Of a stretch of 64,000 nucleotides of DNA, positions 37,728 through 46,380 are shown piece after piece. Within the stretch, counting starts at the first letter, position 1. The number at the start of each line of letters is the position of its first letter. The translations under genes were made by a program, and so were the position numbers. The DNA is from Dimorphilus gyrociliatus (taxonomy: Eukaryota; Animalia; Annelida): assembly GCA_904063045.1 (NCBI GenBank), contig CAJFCJ010000019.1, positions 372,001-436,000 of the forward strand, given 5' to 3'. The notes beneath the pieces were generated by a model. It did no database searches. It saw nothing but the letters and a program-made list of their open reading frames with translations, and had not been told where the DNA came from.

Positions 37728-39444
37728 ATGTCTCATGATAGAACTTCCCCTATGTCGTCTATCTATCGTCTACAGACCGACAGAAGAGGCTACATCGACG
37801 ATCTTGCATCAAGGACGTCATCCATTATGTCATTTACAAGCGTTGCTAATCCTAGCCCGAACGAGTTAAAAGACAGTGATGAATTGGAACTTAGACAATT
37901 TTTGGAGGAAGAAGATAAGGAATTAGCCAAGTTGTTAAGCTATTGCGACGATATGAAAAAATCGAGGGTAAAAAACGAGGAAAGTGAGTACTCCATTCTC
38001 TATTTGTTAAAGCTTCTGCTATTTTCTAGATTTTCTTTTCAGAATTGCAACGTTCTTCAAGCCAAAACCTTACGAATTCACCTCACAGCGTAATTGTTCG
38101 TCGTGGAGGTCGTAGTTCAACGGATGGGGTTGTGGCTTACGAGTCCCTGGGCGGGTTTGACAAGAATTTGAGCAACACCCTAAAAATTGACATACCAGAT
38201 GTACCGAAATCAAAGAAAGAAAAACCCAAATTGCCACTAGTTACAAACCCTTATACTGGTGTCCACTTAGAGTTTGATCAAGAGGAAAGAACTCAAGAGG
38301 CTGATTATAGGCTTTTAAGAACAAAATGGAGTAGATCTTACGCTGAGGTAACTGGGGCCAAACGTGGTATGGGAGCGGTCGAATGTATTCTTCCTCAGTT
38401 ACCAGTTTTAAATTCTAACGAGGTTTGTATATTTGCAAACAATGTATATTTTTCTCTAGCCAATCTTTAGCCAACTTCAATCATAAAACTAAATTGATGC
38501 AGGTAAAGTTCATTCGACAAAAAGAAACAGGCGAACCTATATGTCTGGGATCAGGATCAAGGGCAGCGTGTTTTTTAGGGGAATTTCAGAATCATACAGT
38601 CTGCGTAAAGATTTATAATAATGCGAATGTCGTTCTGGTTGTCAAAGAGGCTAAAATGATGCAACATCTTTATCAATCTGATCCAAATATTGCTCCCAAA
38701 TTTTTTGGCTTTATACATTTAGCACCCCATTTAGAGCACCCATTCGTCAGTATTGCTTTAGTAGTAGAGTTCATTGGTGATTACGAAAGGCAACAATCGA
38801 CCAGCCTACAACAATTAGTCGATATGGAACAGGCGAGAAGGGCGGCAGGAACTCACTTTATGAGAAATGTAGAATGGTTAGCTCTACTGTTAAAAGTCGG
38901 TACCGTATTAGAACAAGTGCATCGCAAATTGATTATACTTGGTGGAATGAGAGCGAGACATATTGGATTAAAATGGAAAGGATTCGGATATGATAAACCG
39001 TGTATACTTAATGTGTTTAGGGCAAGACTTCTTTCAGTTTCTACAATTAAACATCAAAAGGATAAGGATGAAATAATAAAAATTGGTAATACCGGCCACG
39101 AGACTGATGCAACATCAATGGCTGCCTTAGTGTCCGACATAAATAAAGCACTTAAACTTGGGTTGGATGAGGCTACGTCCCATGCCAGAAGAGACGCTCC
39201 ACTTAACGATTGGTGGGGCCTTCGTGACACAATTCGATTTTTAGCAACACGGCTTAACGCGGCCCTTGGTTCAGAGGCCGGAGGCGATCGAAATAAAAAT
39301 AACACGCTTCCGTCGAAGACCGAAAAATGTTTATGGAACAAAGTTATAGAAAGCTCGAAAAATCCATCAGTTAAAAGTCCTTTGACAAATTTCAGATCAA
39401 TAGACCCTACTTCGGCCGATCTATCATCTATTCAATCCAAGTAA
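37728..39444 (+). CDS. Protein kinase-fold pseudokinase (3 exons)
   Basis: LGSGSRAAC (Gly loop), VCVK (beta3 Lys) and KEAKMM (alphaC Glu) are present. The catalytic loop reads VHRKLIILGGMRARHI and the DFG position reads ILNVFRAR. Confidence 0.75.
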
Positions 39445-39821
39445 CAAGGATACGATGACAAAAGAAATAAAACGAAAATTTATTTCTTTCAGAGACTCTC
39501 CTTAATAAAAATCTTTAAATGAGTACTAATTATATATTCTTTTGCTGTCCAATGGTGCTTTAGTAATTACTGGAATAGATTGCTAAAGAAAACGATTAAA
39601 TACATCCGCACCGAAGTGACAATAGTTAAAATTTGCTTTAGTCCAATCTTGTTGACCCATGCGATGCTGAATCAACTGGATGATCTGTGACGTAATCGTC
39701 AGTATTACCGCAAAAAACTCTCATAGCCATTTTCCAAAATCTTTCAATAATCGATCCTTTATTAGACTAATTAGGATAAGAAAAGCCTCATTTAGCCTAT
39801 CATATTTAAATTTATCAAATA

Positions 39822-40303
39822 TCAGTTTACGCTAACCTGATCTTCTGTGTACAAACCGTGATCAATGTGACAATGTTTTCGTATAAGATCTTCCAAATTA
39901 TCGCCGCTTGCCCCGCATATTTCATCAATTTTCTTCTGATGTTTATATAATACAAACGTTGGTAAAGATGTAATCCCTTGCCTTTCGGCAATGTTCTTTA
40001 TAGAACGAAAAATATTAATTATGTCAAAGCGATATTTAACAAATAGAGGTATAACCTCAAATACTTCAATGTCAAGTTTAATAAAAACAACATCTTTATA
40101 TTTGTTGGCTAGCTGTTTATACTTGGGTACCATCTTTCGACAAGGTCCACACCTAATTTATTCACTATGTTGTGTACAGTATAGAATAGTTATTAACATT
40201 ACCATGCAGCAAAAAAGTCGACAACAACAATTTTATCGTCCGCTTCTTTCAACAACTCATTAAAATGAGATTCTGATGTTAAAACTATAACTTTTCCTGT
40301 CAT
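39822..40303 (-). CDS. TXN: Thioredoxin (3 exons)
   Basis: MTGKVIVLTSESHFNELLKEADDKIVVVDFFAAW|CGPCRKMVP...FIKLDI...|NIAERQGITSLPTF; WCGPC active site and cis-Pro motif. Confidence 0.9.
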
Positions 40304-40537
40304 TACTGTTACTATTCTAATTATTTCTTTTTCATTCTTTATTTATATAATATAAAAATAAACATTCCGTTTTTTTTCAACATTTAAACACAATTTAGCC
40401 TATATTTTGTAGAAGATATACATTATTCATGAATATGCACGTATATATATACAGTTATATATATATATACCGTTTAGTTAAAATATACATAAATTTACAC
40501 GTTTGTATATAAAAGAAAAATGTTTACAAACATATTA

Positions 40538-41375
40538 TTACTGTTTTGTTGAGTTTTCTAGTGCTTGTAGTTCTTTTTCTAGCGAAATGCATGCACTCTC
40601 TATTTCATAATTTTTACCAACAAGTACCACCCAACGTTCTTCTAATTCCTTAAGATTACCACCAGTTGTCGTTTGCTCACTCTTCCTATTCCAATTTATA
40701 TCTTGAATTTCTTTCCTAAGATATAAGAAAGATAATTAGAATAGTTATTATTTTAGAACAAAGAAGAATGCGATTTTTTTAAGATCTTACTTCAAAGCGC
40801 TAAGCTGCTTCTGCGCACTGCGAAGCATGTATTGGAGGGTGTCGTTATGTTGCTTCCATACTTCAGGACCATAAGTTGATAAAAGGTTCAAGTTCATTAT
40901 TCTTAATGCCTAAGGATTAAATACAATATAATTAGGGCTAAATTAGTTATATTTTTTAATATTCTGTAAAAATATCTTTTACTTGATGTTCCAATTGAGC
41001 GTGAGAATTATTTACGCTCTCTTGCCAAGAACTAAAGTCTGTTACTTTGCCAGCTGGAGGCTGAGGTAATTCATAACGTTTCATGCTTAATACTTCCATT
41101 GGAGCTCTAGCTTGTAATCTTTCAAATTCTTGTTTCATTACGTCTGTTTCAAAAGCTGTGTAATTGGCAGAGGGTAAATGTTCCAGATAGTTTTTAGTAG
41201 GTCTATATCGACGTGTTTCTTCATCAACTAAAGATTGAGCCTGAAGCCGATTGAAATCTAACGATAATGGGGTGATATGAAATATTAAAAGAAATCTTAC
41301 AGCTTCCCTAACGCCTGGATCTTCATATCCTTGATCGTAGTAAGGCAATGCATCCACTAAAACTTCTGATGCCAT
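40538..41375 (-). CDS. BCAS2: Pre-mRNA splicing factor SPF27 (4 exons)
   Basis: [25 protein letters not shown]|[23 protein letters not shown]...[11 protein letters not shown]...NSHAQLEHQ|[10 protein letters not shown]...|[12 protein letters not shown]...KNYEIESAC. Confidence 0.96.
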
Positions 41376-42426
41376 TCTTGAGCAGAAATAGTAAGGAAGT
41401 AATAAGAAACAAAACAAAGATTATAGCCGAAAATTTGCAAACGATAGCGGTATAACAAATAGTCAAGTTCTTAAATCAAATCTTATTCAAGATTTTTCTC
41501 GGTGTCCATGGTTGAACAAATTTTCAAAATACTTTTTTACGTACTAAAACACACACATAAAATCCTAATTATACAAAATTCTTTAATATTTTAAAGAAAA
41601 AAAATAATTATAATAATATTCATATCTCCGTTTGCTTACAATTTTTATAGGTTAATTTATTATACTAATTAGTATGTTTTACATACAAATGAGTTCTATA
41701 AATTTCAGCAGTTTCTTTCGAACATTATTCAAATAGTTTAAAGGGAAATATGGTTAAACGATGAATAATACCTGTTAGGTGTATTTTAAAACTAAACTTA
41801 TAGTACAACCATTCTTGTTTCTGTGTTTTAAATTTTTAAATTCGTTTAAAGAAGTAAACCTTTTTATTGCTCTGATAAATTTAGTTTAATACATGTTTTT
41901 CAAATGTAATTTAATTACAATAATGCACAAATGCGTTTCTATGGACAATTTATTGTACTTCAATTTTTTACGGTTGTTGTAATGGGCTTTTTGAATATAA
42001 CGGCGGGTTATATATGACTCTCTGAAACTAAAAATAACTTATGATCTGTACTTTGTTTTTATGACGGAGTGATAATGGACGTTTTAGCGAATCAGCATTC
42101 TTTCTCGATAAAAAGTGATAGGATTGAGAAAGCCCTCAAAAAGAAAAATGAAGTCAGTTAAAATAGTTCGTCATAGGTTAACTACTTTTTTAATATATTT
42201 TATCCCAAATTGCTGACTATTACTAAAATATGTAAATAGATTTCACTGGAAATAATTATATAAAGCATTTGAGTCACATTTATAACTTTTAATAAATATC
42301 GCGTAGTAATACATATGACAGTTAGCGAACTTACGCGCAGCTCCGGACTTCCGGTATAATCCATTTCATTTATACCTTAATTGATAAAAGGCGTGAGTAT
42401 CCGGAATTTCTTGTAGCGTGGCATAC

Positions 42427-43827
42427 ATGACTTCATTACGCCGACAAGATCCTAGGTTAAATTGTTTCAAAGCTGATTATGCTTTGATAACAAGAATAGC
42501 GACCAACATTGACTCATCATCAAGTTATCCCTATGTTCAACAAAACTCAAAAATTGACGTACCCAGGGCAAGAGAAGAACAGGAGGAATTCATTGATGTC
42601 CTTCGTAGAATAGCTATTGATGTTATAGAATTGCCCTGTGACGAAAGACATCCAGATGGCCTATTCATTGGTGATTGTGCTGTTGTGATTAATGGAACTG
42701 CATTAATCTGTAACCCACCATCTGAAGATGGAGCCCCTCCCAGGCAAGGTGAATTAACGGTAGTAAGACAGGTGCTGAAAAAAGAGTTGGGACTGAAAAT
42801 CGTTGAAGTTGACAGCGAAAAAGGAAAGGCAGTAGTTTGTGGTTAGTAGTTCGAAAGTAATTTTGTTATTACTAGAGATATTAGACAAAAAATTATTTTT
42901 TTTAAGTTAAATATAAATTAAGTATTATATTACATTGTATCTATAAATAATGTGTATAAGTAATGTTTAAAGTGTTGATGTAATCTTATATCTACCACCG
43001 TTTAGCCTTAGATAACCTGAGTTGTAAACATTATTTTGGATAAAAATCTTGGGAATCAGTATATATATACACAAGCGTAGATTCTATATAGACATTTGAT
43101 ATTGAACACATTCTGCATATATATAAACACAATATATATAATGATAGGAAATAATATAAGATTAACTTAATGGGTCATTATCTATTCCTCCAATTTTATA
43201 CACTATTACTATTTATTAGGAATTTGTTAATCTTTCGTTCCATTCAATCAGAAGTAGATTTTCATCGTTATGCATATTTTATCTGTTGACTAGTCAAACA
43301 TTAGGTCTTAATAGTCCTTATCTATTATTCCAGGCACGGACGTTCTATGGACAGGTCGCGAAATTTTTGTTGGCATAGGGAAAAGAACCAATATTTTAGG
43401 GGCTCAATCTGTGGCAAAAGCTTTTCCTGAATACAGTACATCGATAGTAAACGTCCGCGAACCGTATCTTCATCTTAAAGACTGCGTTTCTCTATGTGGT
43501 CCTGAAATTTTGGCGATTGCTAAATCAAATGCTGCGAAAGAAATGCTAAGGGAGATGAGAAAAGCTGGCCATGGATATAAGATGATCGAAGTTGAAGAGG
43601 ATCTAGCTGCCAACACCATTTATTGTAATAATACCGTAATTCACTTGTCCAGTGATACTATACCCAGAAGTATAGGTCTGTTCAAAGATAAATTGGATTT
43701 CCAATGTGTGCCTGTTGAAATCAAAGAGCCGCTCAAAAGAGGCGCAGGCCTATCAAATATTGTTCTATTAGTTAATAAGCAGAAACATTTAAGAAGTATC
43801 ATGACTACTGCTACTTCAGCTCAGTAG
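42427..43827 (+). CDS. DDAH: Dimethylarginine dimethylaminohydrolase-like protein, predicted catalytically inactive (2 exons)
   Basis: IDVPRAREEQ, ELPCDERHPDGLFIGDCAVV, G|TDVLWTGREIFVGIGKRTN, YLHLKDCVSLCGP, EDLAANTIY and GAGLSNIVLL. Intron 42842-43333. Confidence 0.9.
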
Positions 43828-45011
43828 TACTTGGTATTACATTAATAGAATCGTATTGAATAGTCGAATTTTGCACTAAAAAATTTTACAAAGTGCTAGT
43901 AAAAAAAGAGAGAAGGTAGAAAAAAATTCGATTATCTAGTATGGAATATGATTATCTTTGGCTTATATGTTCTTTTTTTCCTTCTTTTTTTTTACGTTTG
44001 TCTGCATAAATGTACTAGTTAACTGACTAAAAAACTTGCTTAACTTACCTGTTTTTTGTTTACTAAATAAGGTGACAATTAATAATAATATGTTTCCTTG
44101 GTTTATATACTTAGAAAAAGAGATTGAACACTATTTACGAAGTAATTAATATCGAAAATTGTAAAAATTAGTTTTTTTATTATTTTATAAGAGAAAAGCT
44201 TGTTCTACTTAACCATTTAAGAAAGATTAACACACACATATATATATCTATATATACTTTTTTTGATAATCAAAAAGATAAGTTTTTGTTTTCAAGTTAC
44301 AGTTAACTAGTGTCCAAGCTAGATATTCTTCTGAGTATGAATGTATTCTGTTCATAAAAATGTATACTTAATTAATTGAAAGGTTTTAAACCTCCCGAGT
44401 TTTCTACTGTAGCTTGAATGTTATTGCTAACTGTAGCTTTTCTGCTGCATTGATATTTTTCAATTCTGAATACTGTAGATTTTTCTATAATTATTATAAG
44501 ATGTGTCTTCTACGTTGGTTTTTAGCCATTAGATTGTGCGATTAGTTACCAATACAGTGTATATTAAAAAATGAAATGAGTAAAAAAAATCATAATATGT
44601 TAATTTACTTTAAAAACTATTTTAAAAATTTACCTGAGTCAAATTTGCCCTACTTTTCCTAATATTTATATAATTATATAATATAACATACCTGTGATTA
44701 AAATACTATTCATAATAAATATTTATTGGATGTAAATTATACGAAAATAATACTAAACAAATAATAGTTAAATCATTAGAAATTTATTAATTTGTTGAAT
44801 TTTTATTGTTTAAACAAGATCAAAAGTCCATCCTCCTTTTTTTGTCTTTCCTTTGTTCAAATAATTCATAAGAAGTATAGTGTAAATACAATAATATTAG
44901 TAATTGTACACTATTCTTCGTTTAATTATTGAATATTTGTGCCAATATGAAGTATTCTTTTAATACCATCTTCAAAGTGGAAAAATTGATAAAATAATTT
45001 CTCAAACTCAT

Positions 45012-45025
45012 ACGCCATCTATGGG
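45012..45025 (-). promoter_or_regulatory. CTCF-like motif in the DDAH-LRR intergenic region
   Basis: Minus strand CCCATAGATGGCGT, isolated in AT-rich DNA. Confidence 0.45.
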
Positions 45026-46380
45026 ATTTGAATGAGAATAGTTTTTTATTTAAAAAGTTGAAAGAGACTACTCCTTAATTTAAGAATTAAGTCATTTTTC
45101 TGTAAAGTTCGAGTATAAATATGGTCAAAAAAGGTTGGTTAATAGTTGATTGTTAGTGGTTGAATATACAGTATCATACTCATGTTGGATTAACCAAGAT
45201 TAATAACAGTCCCTAGAAAAATTTATTAAAAATCCTTGATAATCTAATTTATTTTCATTTATTTTAATCATAAACTTCGAGATCAGATGTAAAATAATAT
45301 TAGAAATACCCAAATGAATACGTATTCCGAGAATGATGTGATTAGTCAGAATTTTACACACTCCCTAGGACATTGACACCGATAAAGCAATTGTGATGGA
45401 GAGAATAAGAAACAAACTGTGTTGTTAAGATGGATGGTTAATGAAAATTTTGGAGAAGAATAGAGCTTTTTTTTTTCTTTTTAAAAAAAACTCCATCAAT
45501 CTCTATGATTGATTGTTTCTTTGAACAAAAGATATTATTGATTCATATTTTTAACTTTTTAATTCCCGAGATATGCTACTTGAAAATTCATGCTATTTAC
45601 TCTCTTTATATTCTTACATTATGTAGAAATGTTGATCAATAGTAAGGAAAATAGTTCAAAGGAAATAGTTTAACGATATTATTGTATATCGTATAAATAT
45701 AGTCTTATTATAGACAGATATATGATCCATTAGTTTTTATAATAATAAAAAAATGCTCATAATACACTTCCGGTTTCTGAAAATAAAACTTTCTTTACTT
45801 TTTTCTCTCTCTATTACTCTCCCTCTCTTCTGATTTCGATTTTTATGCAAAGCGTCCATTCATTAATCGTTAAATACAACACTTCCGATCTGGAGTAATC
45901 GTAAAGCCTTGTCTCAGTAGCTATTCTTAAAAATCAGGCTAATGAGATTAAATTATCTATAAAAAAAAACTTCTATCTAATTATTCGTTATCAAGTAGAT
46001 AATTTAACAATAAGTAGTACTCGTGTAGTATGAGTTTGTACCTAGCATAGACTTTGCAGCCTAATATTGTAAATACATTTCAATACGAATGATACGATAA
46101 GATGCCTTATCTATTATAATTATACCTAATGGGTGTGAATTTCAGTCGACTTAATATCTTCGTTTGATGTTTTAAGGTAGTGTTTAGTCACGAATCGTTC
46201 AAAGAAAGATTAATCCCGGTAAATACCTTTGAAAAATAGAGTTGATTTTTCGAACAGCATAAGAATAAAATAAGGCCATTTTTGGTTGATACTAAAAGTT
46301 GACCTTTGTTCTGCGAAAACTTCTCCAGACATTTTTTTCAATTTTTTTCGTTATTAGAGAAGGAACACAGTGACATTATT

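What the first reader, a model, noticed from the sequence alone, without database searches (positions are those of the whole stretch)
42427..43827. DDAH pseudoenzyme sharing DDAH2-type substitutions
The DDAH1 nucleophile Cys274 (GLLTCCSVL) aligns to Asn in GAGLSNIVLL (codon 43756-43758), and substrate-binding Glu78 (FVED) is Gly (FIGD, 42670). Catalytic His and Asp are retained. As I recall them, human DDAH2 has LLGD, DGTD and GAGLSS, matching this protein's IGD, GTD and GAGLS, and DDAH2 has been reported not to hydrolyse ADMA. Either a non-catalytic DDAH lineage predates vertebrates or the loss converged, which points to a conserved non-enzymatic function.
Basis: partly seen in the sequence, partly recalled or inferred. 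Interest (0 to 1): 0.7.

Follow-up and report, generated by a model that had tools for sequence, protein, structure and literature searches.

The report
Catalytically disabled DDAH in Dimorphilus
The only DDAH-like gene I could find in the tiny annelid Dimorphilus gyrociliatus has lost two of its three catalytic residues but has been kept nearly unchanged by selection in three related lineages. It is therefore a working, probably non-hydrolytic relative of the enzyme that clears the NO-synthase inhibitor ADMA, and it arose independently of vertebrate DDAH2.

Summary
The gene is real. It has two exons (42427-42841 and 43334-43827, + strand) and encodes 302 aa, identical to public DgyrCDS11364 of Dimorphilus gyrociliatus. 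It is a clear DDAH1 homologue: PDB E 3.5e-42, and an AlphaFold model with pLDDT 92.6 and TM 0.84-0.92 to human DDAH1.

Gly82 sits at Glu78. Asn280 sits at Cys274, and the Cys that is invariant in annelids aligns to Ile281.

One statement is wrong. The triad acid (Asp127, Glu in annelids) is not retained; it is Cys138. His185 and the amino-acid-binding residues (Asp77, Phe80, Asp83, Arg106, Arg156) are kept.

All 35 other annelid-type homologues sampled keep Glu, His and Cys.

Two further lineages carry the same state. One is a syntenic genomic locus and the other is intron-less transcript contigs, both at about 90% aa identity. Pairwise dN/dS is 0.04-0.08. So this is a selected protein, not decay or an assembly error.

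The DDAH2 resemblance (LLGD, DGTD, GAGLSS) is real but convergent. The protein nests inside annelid DDAHs, DDAH2 is a vertebrate duplicate, and an AU test rejects joining them (p 0.0003). DDAH2 also keeps Asp127 and has lost Asp73 and Arg145, the opposite pattern.

The scan has no other DDAH note in this genome.

The parts
42300..42406 (+). Conserved block of about 107 nt just upstream of the start codon (promoter and 5' UTR). It holds an ETS-like ACTTCCGG.
   Evidence: It is about 94-97% identical in two related lineages whose synonymous sites differ by dS 0.85-1.2. Identity collapses upstream of 42298. The relatives' transcript contig starts at the position matching 42335. There is no Rfam match.
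42427..42841 (+). Exon 1, coding residues 1-138 plus the first base of codon 139. The donor is G|GTTAGT.
   Evidence: It hits hDDAH1 at E 4.2e-12. The same phase-1 junction is seen in the relative's genomic locus L004 and, spliced, in the transcript contig L002.
42670..42672 (+). Gly82 codon (GGT), at the position of hDDAH1 Glu78.
   Evidence: Gly here is shared with Cys-bearing annelid sequences.
42838..42840 (+). Cys138 codon (TGT), at the position of the triad acid (hDDAH1 Asp127; Glu in 35 of 35 other annelid-type sequences).
   Evidence: Both related lineages have TGC, a synonymous difference, so Cys itself is conserved.
42842..43333 (+). Intron of 492 nt, GT...AG, phase 1.
43334..43827 (+). 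Exon 2, coding the last two bases of codon 139, residues 140-302 and the stop TAG (43825-43827).
   Evidence: It hits hDDAH1 at E 1.5e-23.
43336..43338 (+). Thr140 codon, at hDDAH1 Gly129, which lines the alkyl (leaving-group) pocket. DDAH2 also has Thr here.
43471..43473 (+). His185 codon (CAT), the retained triad His (hDDAH1 His173).
   Evidence: The relatives have CAC.
43756..43761 (+). Asn280 and Ile281 codons (AAT ATT). Asn aligns to hDDAH1 Cys274. Ile aligns to Cys275 and to the Cys that is invariant in annelids.
   Evidence: The relatives have Asn-Val, again without Cys.
43828..44077 (+). 3' UTR, with its extent inferred by homology only.
   Evidence: The relative's transcript contig L002 aligns, loosely, as far as window 44077.

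Best explanation
This is the Dimorphilus orthologue of annelid DDAH, turned into a non-hydrolytic DDAH-fold protein.

Shown:
- The fold is intact.
- The nucleophile Cys is gone (Asn280-Ile281-Val282) and the triad acid is gone (Cys138).
- Two residues of the leaving-group pocket are changed (Glu78 to Gly82, Gly129 to Thr140).
- The residues that hold the amino-acid end and the guanidine of the substrate in DDAH1 are all kept: Asp77, Phe80, Asp83, Arg106, Arg156 and His185.
- This state predates the split of three lineages and has since been held by strong purifying selection.

Inferred:
- It cannot form the covalent thiouronium intermediate, so it does not turn over ADMA or L-NMMA.
- It still binds an arginine-type ligand, or a partner protein through the same face, and acts as a binder, sensor or regulator.
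- It is functionally analogous to ADMA-independent DDAH2, but independently derived and with a different set of surviving residues.
For: Identity and fold:
- The exons are identical to DgyrCDS11364.
- The full-length protein scores 33 bits on PF19420 against a cut-off of 23.
- hDDAH1 matches at E 3.5e-42.
- The AF2 model has pLDDT 92.6, and Foldseek to 7ut0 and 2jai gives TM 0.84/0.90-0.92 at rmsd 1.6-2.0 A.

Residue mapping. Residue roles are taken from PMC10958460.

Specificity of the loss:
- Of 94 columns invariant in 27 annelid sequences, the protein keeps 80.
- Twelve of the 14 changes are conservative.
- The only radical ones are Glu138 to Cys and Cys281 to Ile.
- All 35 other annelid-type sequences have Glu, His and Cys.

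Selection:
- Transcript-like contigs L002 and L003 (90% aa identity) and the syntenic genomic locus L004 carry the same Gly82, Cys138, His185 and Asn280 and no Cys.
- Cys138 and His185 differ only synonymously between lineages.
- dN/dS is 0.050, 0.081 and 0.038, with dS 0.6-1.2.

Precedents:
- PaDDAH C249S binds ligand without turnover (1h70).
- DDAH2 is ADMA-independent.
Against: - No activity or binding measurement exists.
- With dN/dS near 0.05 almost every residue is conserved, so retention of the binding residues is not specific proof of ligand binding.
- In the ungapped alignment even the 'canonical' annelid proteins have Ser at Cys274 and their Cys at position 275. It is therefore untested whether the annelid family is a true ADMA hydrolase to begin with.
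- A second DDAH gene elsewhere in the genome was not excluded by a whole-genome search.
Confidence: 0.55

Rival explanations
1. It is still an enzyme, with rebuilt chemistry. The new, conserved Cys138 next to His185 serves as a relocated nucleophile or as part of a metal site. The protein would then hydrolyse or modify a different guanidino or amidino substrate.
For: - Cys138 arose by a three-base change at exactly the residue that partners the catalytic His, and it is conserved through a synonymous TGT/TGC difference in three lineages.
- His185 and the ligand-binding Asp and Arg residues are retained.
- In this family the Cys position already slides between +0, +1 and +2 among lineages.
Against: - In DDAH1 and PaDDAH the acid sits behind the His, away from the substrate carbon. 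This rests on established structural knowledge and was not measured here.
- No other sequence among about 250 examined has Cys at this position.
- Conservation at dN/dS 0.05 is general, not specific to Cys138.
Confidence: 0.15
2. It is a pure protein-protein scaffold, as proposed for DDAH2. The old substrate pocket would no longer bind any small molecule.
For: - It shares three local changes with DDAH2: Gly at 78, Thr at 129, and a GAGLS motif without Cys274.
- DDAH2 does not bind ADMA stably.
- The DDAH fold is also used non-catalytically in T. brucei RESC5.
Against: Unlike DDAH2, this protein keeps Asp73, Phe76 and Arg145 (here Asp77, Phe80 and Arg156), the residues that grip the amino-acid moiety.
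Confidence: 0.15
3. It belongs to an ancient non-catalytic DDAH lineage shared with vertebrate DDAH2.
For: The local motif resemblance (LLGD/FIGD, DGTD/CGTD, GAGLSS/GAGLSN) is confirmed.
Against: - The gene tree places it inside the annelid clade (98), with Owenia as sister (96).
- DDAH2 lies within a vertebrate DDAH1+DDAH2 clade (98).
- The AU test rejects the joint clade, with delta lnL 135 and p 0.00026.
- The closest annelid relatives keep the triad.
Confidence: 0.02
4. It is a decaying pseudogene, an assembly error or a mis-spliced model.
For: - Its terminal branch is long: 0.6, against 0.02-0.28 for the Asp82 annelid rows and 0.28 for the median of the whole tree.
- No RNA reads were available for this strain.
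Against: - The 302-codon frame is intact in a genome of about 33% GC.
- The same residues appear in three independent assemblies, including intron-less transcript contigs.
- dN/dS is 0.04-0.08.
- The splice sites are canonical and the intron position is conserved.
- The catalytic-site codons differ by two or three bases from the annelid state.
Confidence: 0.02

Closest known systems
Human and bovine DDAH1 (EC 3.5.3.18; PDB 2jai, 3i2e, 7ut0, 2c6z)
   Same: - Same five-module propeller fold (TM 0.84-0.92) at 34% identity.
- Asp73, Phe76, Asp79, Arg98, Arg145 and His173 are all matched.
   Different: - Cys274 is Asn, Cys275 is Ile, Asp127 is Cys, Glu78 is Gly, Gly129 is Thr and Asp269 is Gly.
- The Asp269 change is shared by all annelid homologues.
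Vertebrate DDAH2 ('DDAH family member 2, ADMA-independent')
   Same: - Gly at position 78, Thr at position 129, a GAGLS motif with no Cys at position 274, and His retained.
- Presumably ADMA-independent.
   Different: - Independent origin (AU p 0.00026).
- DDAH2 keeps Asp127 and a nearby Cys (Cys276 in human, position 275 in snake and skate), and has lost Asp73, Phe76 and Arg145.
- Dimorphilus shows the reverse on all of these points.
Annelid DDAH orthologues (e.g. Ridgeia piscesae P0027, Helobdella robusta P0034 and P0035, and many transcriptome sequences)
   Same: - 52-58% identity (only divergent P0036 lower, 48%), same length class, and the same clade.
- 85% of their invariant positions are kept.
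   Different: They all have Glu at 138 and Cys at 281, and most have Asp at 82.
P. aeruginosa DDAH C249S (PDB 1h70)
   Same: A DDAH without its nucleophile that still binds substrate or product. It serves as a model for a binding-competent, dead protein.
   Different: It is a laboratory mutant of a bacterial enzyme, and its His-Glu pair is intact.
Trypanosoma brucei RESC5 (PDB 8dpk)
   Same: A DDAH-fold protein used non-catalytically. It is a Foldseek hit at TM about 0.71.
   Different: It has only about 15% identity, belongs to an RNA-editing complex and is unrelated in context.

Membership tests
DDAH family (Pfam PF19420 DDAH_eukar; amidinotransferase-superfamily fold) | Sequence and fold membership. 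| tested here: met
   PF19420 scores 33 bits against a cut-off of 23. hDDAH1 matches at E 3.5e-42. The AF2 model reaches TM 0.84-0.92 to DDAH1.
Active dimethylargininase (EC 3.5.3.18) | A nucleophilic Cys (hDDAH1 Cys274) that forms the thiouronium intermediate. | tested here: not met
   Asn280 stands at position 274, Ile281 stands at position 275 and at the annelid Cys, and Val282 follows.
Active dimethylargininase (EC 3.5.3.18) | Triad His (His173). | tested here: met
   His185.
Active dimethylargininase (EC 3.5.3.18) | Triad acid (Asp127, or Glu). | tested here: not met
   Cys138.
Active dimethylargininase (EC 3.5.3.18) | Substrate-binding residues Asp73, Asp79, Arg98 and Arg145. | tested here: met
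   Asp77, Asp83, Arg106 and Arg156.
Active dimethylargininase (EC 3.5.3.18) | Release of citrulline from ADMA or L-NMMA. | not testable with these tools
   This needs a biochemical assay.
Vertebrate DDAH2 lineage | Descent from the vertebrate DDAH1/DDAH2 duplication. | tested here: not met
   The tree and the AU test, p 0.00026.
Vertebrate DDAH2 lineage | The DDAH2 substitution set: E78G, G129T, loss of C274, D73 lost, R145W, D127 kept. | tested here: inconclusive
   Three of the six are shared (E78G, G129T, no C274) and three are opposite.
Pseudoenzyme (a conserved homologue of an enzyme that lacks catalytic residues) | Loss of essential catalytic residues together with purifying selection on the protein. 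| tested here: met
   Two of the three triad residues are lost. dN/dS is 0.04-0.08 among three lineages that share the state.
Pseudoenzyme (a conserved homologue of an enzyme that lacks catalytic residues) | Demonstrated lack of the ancestral activity. | not testable with these tools
   This needs an assay.

The most novel reading that the evidence does not exclude
The swap is not a simple loss. The thiol has moved. Cys138, created at the position of the acid that partners the catalytic His and conserved ever since, forms with His185 a new reactive or metal-binding centre in an otherwise intact arginine-binding pocket. That would give the DDAH fold a new chemistry, or a redox- or zinc-gated ligand sensor.
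Probability: 0.12. Interest if true: 0.75.

Novelty: new variant of a known kind. Interest (0 to 1): 0.45.

Why it matters
Vertebrate DDAH2 was only recently shown not to hydrolyse ADMA, and its real molecular function remains open.

This annelid protein is an independent natural experiment. The same fold lost its nucleophile a second time and stayed under strong selection. It kept the amino-acid-binding residues that DDAH2 lost, and it lost the acid that DDAH2 kept.

Comparing the two could separate what an ADMA-independent DDAH needs (the His, the fold, a remodelled leaving-group pocket) from what it does not need.

If no second copy exists, D. gyrociliatus lacks DDAH-type clearance of methylarginines.

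The wider pattern seen in passing, Cys-less DDAH homologues throughout non-annelid Spiralia, suggests that non-canonical DDAHs are common in invertebrates and apparently undescribed.

Tried and rejected
- Exon-by-exon Pfam scans were nearly blank: exon 1 scored 15 bits and exon 2 matched nothing relevant. Only the full-length public protein passes the threshold.
No reads of the window's own strain were seen.
- The exact-sequence look-up of P0039 found only the NCBI genome contig. RNA-type evidence came instead from a 90%-identical cluster member.
- Second copy:
  - There is none in the window by tblastn.
  - DgyrCDS11364 is the only D. gyrociliatus entry among the 120 listed homologues.
  - The scan's notes hold no DDAH elsewhere.
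  - The canonical neighbours P0031 and P0038 come from unrelated runs.
  - This is not a whole-genome search.
- Rfam found nothing on 41400-44400.
- Paper searches for DDAH with 'pseudoenzyme' (0 papers), with invertebrate terms and with 'catalytically inactive' found nothing relevant.
- The structure tool gives no coordinates, so distances around Cys138 could not be measured.
Exons were searched by reference, the full-length searches used the identical public protein P0039, and dN/dS was summed exon by exon with split codon 139 left out.

Full report
**Anatomy**

The window is AT-rich eukaryotic DNA. Between 42427 and 43827 there are two long + strand frames. They join through a canonical phase-1 intron, G|GTTAGT ... 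CCAG|GC. Exon 1 is 42427-42841, the intron is 42842-43333, and exon 2 is 43334-43827 with the stop TAG.

The exon translations are 138/138 and 163/163 identical to a public 302-aa protein, DgyrCDS11364 of Dimorphilus gyrociliatus (P0039). That protein is encoded on CAJFCJ010000019.1 of GCA_904063045.1.

Full-length searches used the identical public protein.

**What it is**

- Each exon alone hits human DDAH1 in the PDB (E 4.2e-12 and 1.5e-23).
- The full protein gives E 3.5e-42 and passes Pfam PF19420 (33 bits against a cut-off of 23). The single exons do not pass.
- An AlphaFold2 model built on 66 homologues has mean pLDDT 92.6 and pTM 0.90.
- That model superposes on human and bovine DDAH1 with TM 0.84/0.90-0.92 and rmsd 1.6-2.0 A.

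**Active site**

The roles of the hDDAH1 residues come from PMC10958460:

- The triad is Cys274, His173 and Asp127.
- Asp79 and Asp269 clamp the guanidine.
- Asp73, with the Leu30 and Val268 carbonyls, holds the alpha-amine.
- Arg145 and Arg98 hold the carboxylate.
- Glu78 contacts the N-omega.
- Gly129, Leu271 and His173 line the alkyl pocket.

HMMER alignment maps these residues as follows:

| hDDAH1 | Dimorphilus | Status |
|---|---|---|
| Asp73 | Asp77 | kept |
| Phe76 | Phe80 | kept |
| Glu78 | Gly82 | changed |
| Asp79 | Asp83 | kept |
| Arg98 | Arg106 | kept |
| Asp127 | Cys138 | changed |
| Gly129 | Thr140 | changed |
| Arg145 | Arg156 | kept |
| His173 | His185 | kept |
| Cys274 | Asn280 | changed |
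| Cys275 | Ile281 | changed |

Cys274 is the first Cys of TCCS. The C274S crystal variant 3p8p reads TSCS in the same alignment.

The statement that the catalytic Asp is retained is wrong, because the triad acid is Cys138, the last full codon of exon 1. No alternative donor could supply a Glu or Asp codon there.

**Comparison with relatives**

A word search seeded with the closest fragment found 170 homologues. I aligned the 112 sequences of 240 aa or more held by then.

- All 35 other annelid-type sequences have Glu at 138, His at 185 and a Cys aligned to Ile281. 28 of them have Asp at 82, six have Gly and one has Ser.
- Of 94 columns invariant in 27 core annelid sequences, the Dimorphilus protein keeps 80 (85%), as many as other divergent annelid sequences.
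- Twelve of the 14 changes are conservative. The only radical ones are Glu138 to Cys and Cys281 to Ile.
- The damage is thus aimed at the catalytic machinery and not spread over the fold.

One caveat applies. In the ungapped alignment to hDDAH1, the annelid Cys falls on Cys275 and a Ser falls on Cys274. Whether the annelid 'SSC' proteins are ADMA hydrolases is therefore untested.

**Is it alive?**

The 90%-identity cluster of P0039 holds three Logan-derived members.

- P0291 (302 aa, 90% identical) sits on 1.2-kb contigs with an uninterrupted 909-nt frame (L002 and L003). These contigs are intron-less and transcript-like, and they show the predicted exon junction.
- P0289 and P0290 are the two exons of a third lineage on genomic contigs. 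Locus L004 has the intron at the same phase-1 position and is collinear with window 38569-45776, so it is the orthologous locus.
- All three lineages have Gly82, Cys138, Thr140, His185 and Asn280, and no Cys at 280-282. Position 281 is Ile or Val.
- Cys138 is TGT versus TGC and His185 is CAT versus CAC. These are synonymous differences.

Nei-Gojobori estimates were summed exon by exon with split codon 139 left out:

| Pair | dS | dN | dN/dS |
|---|---|---|---|
| window vs L002 | 1.19 | 0.059 | 0.050 |
| window vs L004 | 0.85 | 0.069 | 0.081 |
| L002 vs L004 | 0.60 | 0.023 | 0.038 |

The largest dS is near saturation, so that ratio is rough.

The disabled state is therefore older than these splits and has been under strong purifying selection since. 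This excludes a pseudogene, an assembly error and a wrong gene model.

**DDAH2 question**

The consortium paper PMC10256801 states that in human DDAH2 the DDAH1 nucleophile is replaced by Ser274 or Leu275. It also states that only Cys276 remains nearby and that DDAH2 does not hydrolyse ADMA. Its Supplementary Fig. 1 shows LLGD, DGTD, KWTN and GAGLSS.

An exhaustive search of the 50%-identity representative library with phmmer (1889 hits at E 0.001 or better) supplied named vertebrate sequences:

- DDAH2 from bat, finch and cobra, and a DDAH2-type skate sequence that NCBI labels DDAH1-like.
- DDAH1 from a seal, and an unnamed DDAH1-like turtle (Caretta) protein.

An ML tree of 65 sequences gives these results:

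- The Dimorphilus protein lies inside a 20-sequence annelid clade (SH-aLRT 98), with Owenia as its sister (96), within Spiralia (97).
- DDAH1 and DDAH2 form a vertebrate clade (98) beside a sea urchin sequence.
- Forcing Dimorphilus to join DDAH2 costs 135 log-likelihood units (AU p 0.00026).

The resemblance is also only partial. DDAH2 keeps Asp127 and has lost Asp73, Phe76 and Arg145, while Dimorphilus keeps those three and has lost the acid. Gly at 78 and Ser or Thr at 129 recur in Cys-bearing annelids.

The similarity is therefore convergent or coincidental, not inherited.

**Mechanism**

Shown: the fold is intact, the covalent-catalysis residues are missing, the ligand-gripping residues are retained, and the protein is under strong constraint.

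Inferred: the protein no longer hydrolyses methylarginines but still uses the pocket, most likely to bind an arginine-type ligand or a partner. PaDDAH C249S, which still binds ligand (1h70), shows that this is physically reasonable.

A minority reading is that Cys138, sitting beside His185, forms a new reactive or metal-binding centre. I could not test the geometry, because the model's coordinates are not returned.

**Second copy**

- There is none in the window.
- DgyrCDS11364 is the only D. gyrociliatus entry among the 120 listed homologues.
- The scan's notes hold no other DDAH for this genome.
- The nearest canonical sequences come from unrelated runs.
- A whole-assembly tblastn remains to be done.

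**Novelty**

The gene is annotated but unnamed. I found no paper that links DDAH with pseudoenzymes or that describes invertebrate Cys-less DDAHs. The genome paper does not mention it.

It is a new, independently evolved variant of a known kind, the ADMA-independent DDAH-family protein. The finding is solid and moderately interesting.

Noticed in passing
window 42300-42406: A block of about 107 nt directly upstream of the DDAH start codon is 94-97% identical in the two related lineages, whose synonymous sites are near saturation. Identity drops to background upstream of 42298, and the 3' UTR is only about 60-65% identical. The block contains an ETS-like ACTTCCGG and a CGCG-rich near-palindrome. 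It is a strongly constrained promoter or 5' UTR element of unknown function. Rfam has no match.
   Followed up: partly
proteins P0045-P0124; not in the window: All 24 non-annelid or basal spiralian DDAH homologues sampled have no Cys at the three nucleophile-region positions, and 13 of them also lack the catalytic His. They come from Owenia, Lingula, nemerteans, flatworms, bivalves and a bryozoan. Either the Cys was lost many times, or it was lost once in early Spiralia and regained in other annelids. Whether these species have a Cys-bearing paralogue was not checked.
   Followed up: partly
proteins P0070-P0118: A tight group of 38 Logan-derived proteins of about 290-340 aa has Asn at the triad acid and Glu at Arg145, and all but one also have Arg at the triad His. 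In most of them the Cys is shifted two places. The group nests among arthropod sequences next to mite proteins (Tropilaelaps, Medioppia). It looks like another large, conserved family of disabled DDAHs.
   Followed up: no
P0010 and other annelid, insect and priapulid DDAHs: In the ungapped alignment to human DDAH1 these proteins carry Ser at Cys274 and their conserved Cys at position 275 ('LSSC'). Snake DDAH2 shows the same LSSC arrangement, and the skate DDAH2-type protein reads LSFC, with its Cys likewise at position 275. Beetles and human DDAH2 have the Cys one place further on. The position of the nucleophile, or its very existence, in protostome DDAHs seems never to have been tested.
   Followed up: partly
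window 42915-43084 (DDAH intron) and 41991-42170 (upstream intergenic): Stretches inside the intron and in the upstream intergenic region stay similar to the related lineage's locus L004 (tblastx segments of 60-90% identity). This hints at conserved non-coding elements.
   Followed up: no
window about 39638-41375, minus strand (L001 212-1949): The public gene model upstream encodes a 374-aa product with both BCAS2 and thioredoxin Pfam hits. This may be a fused annotation of two neighbouring genes.
   Followed up: no
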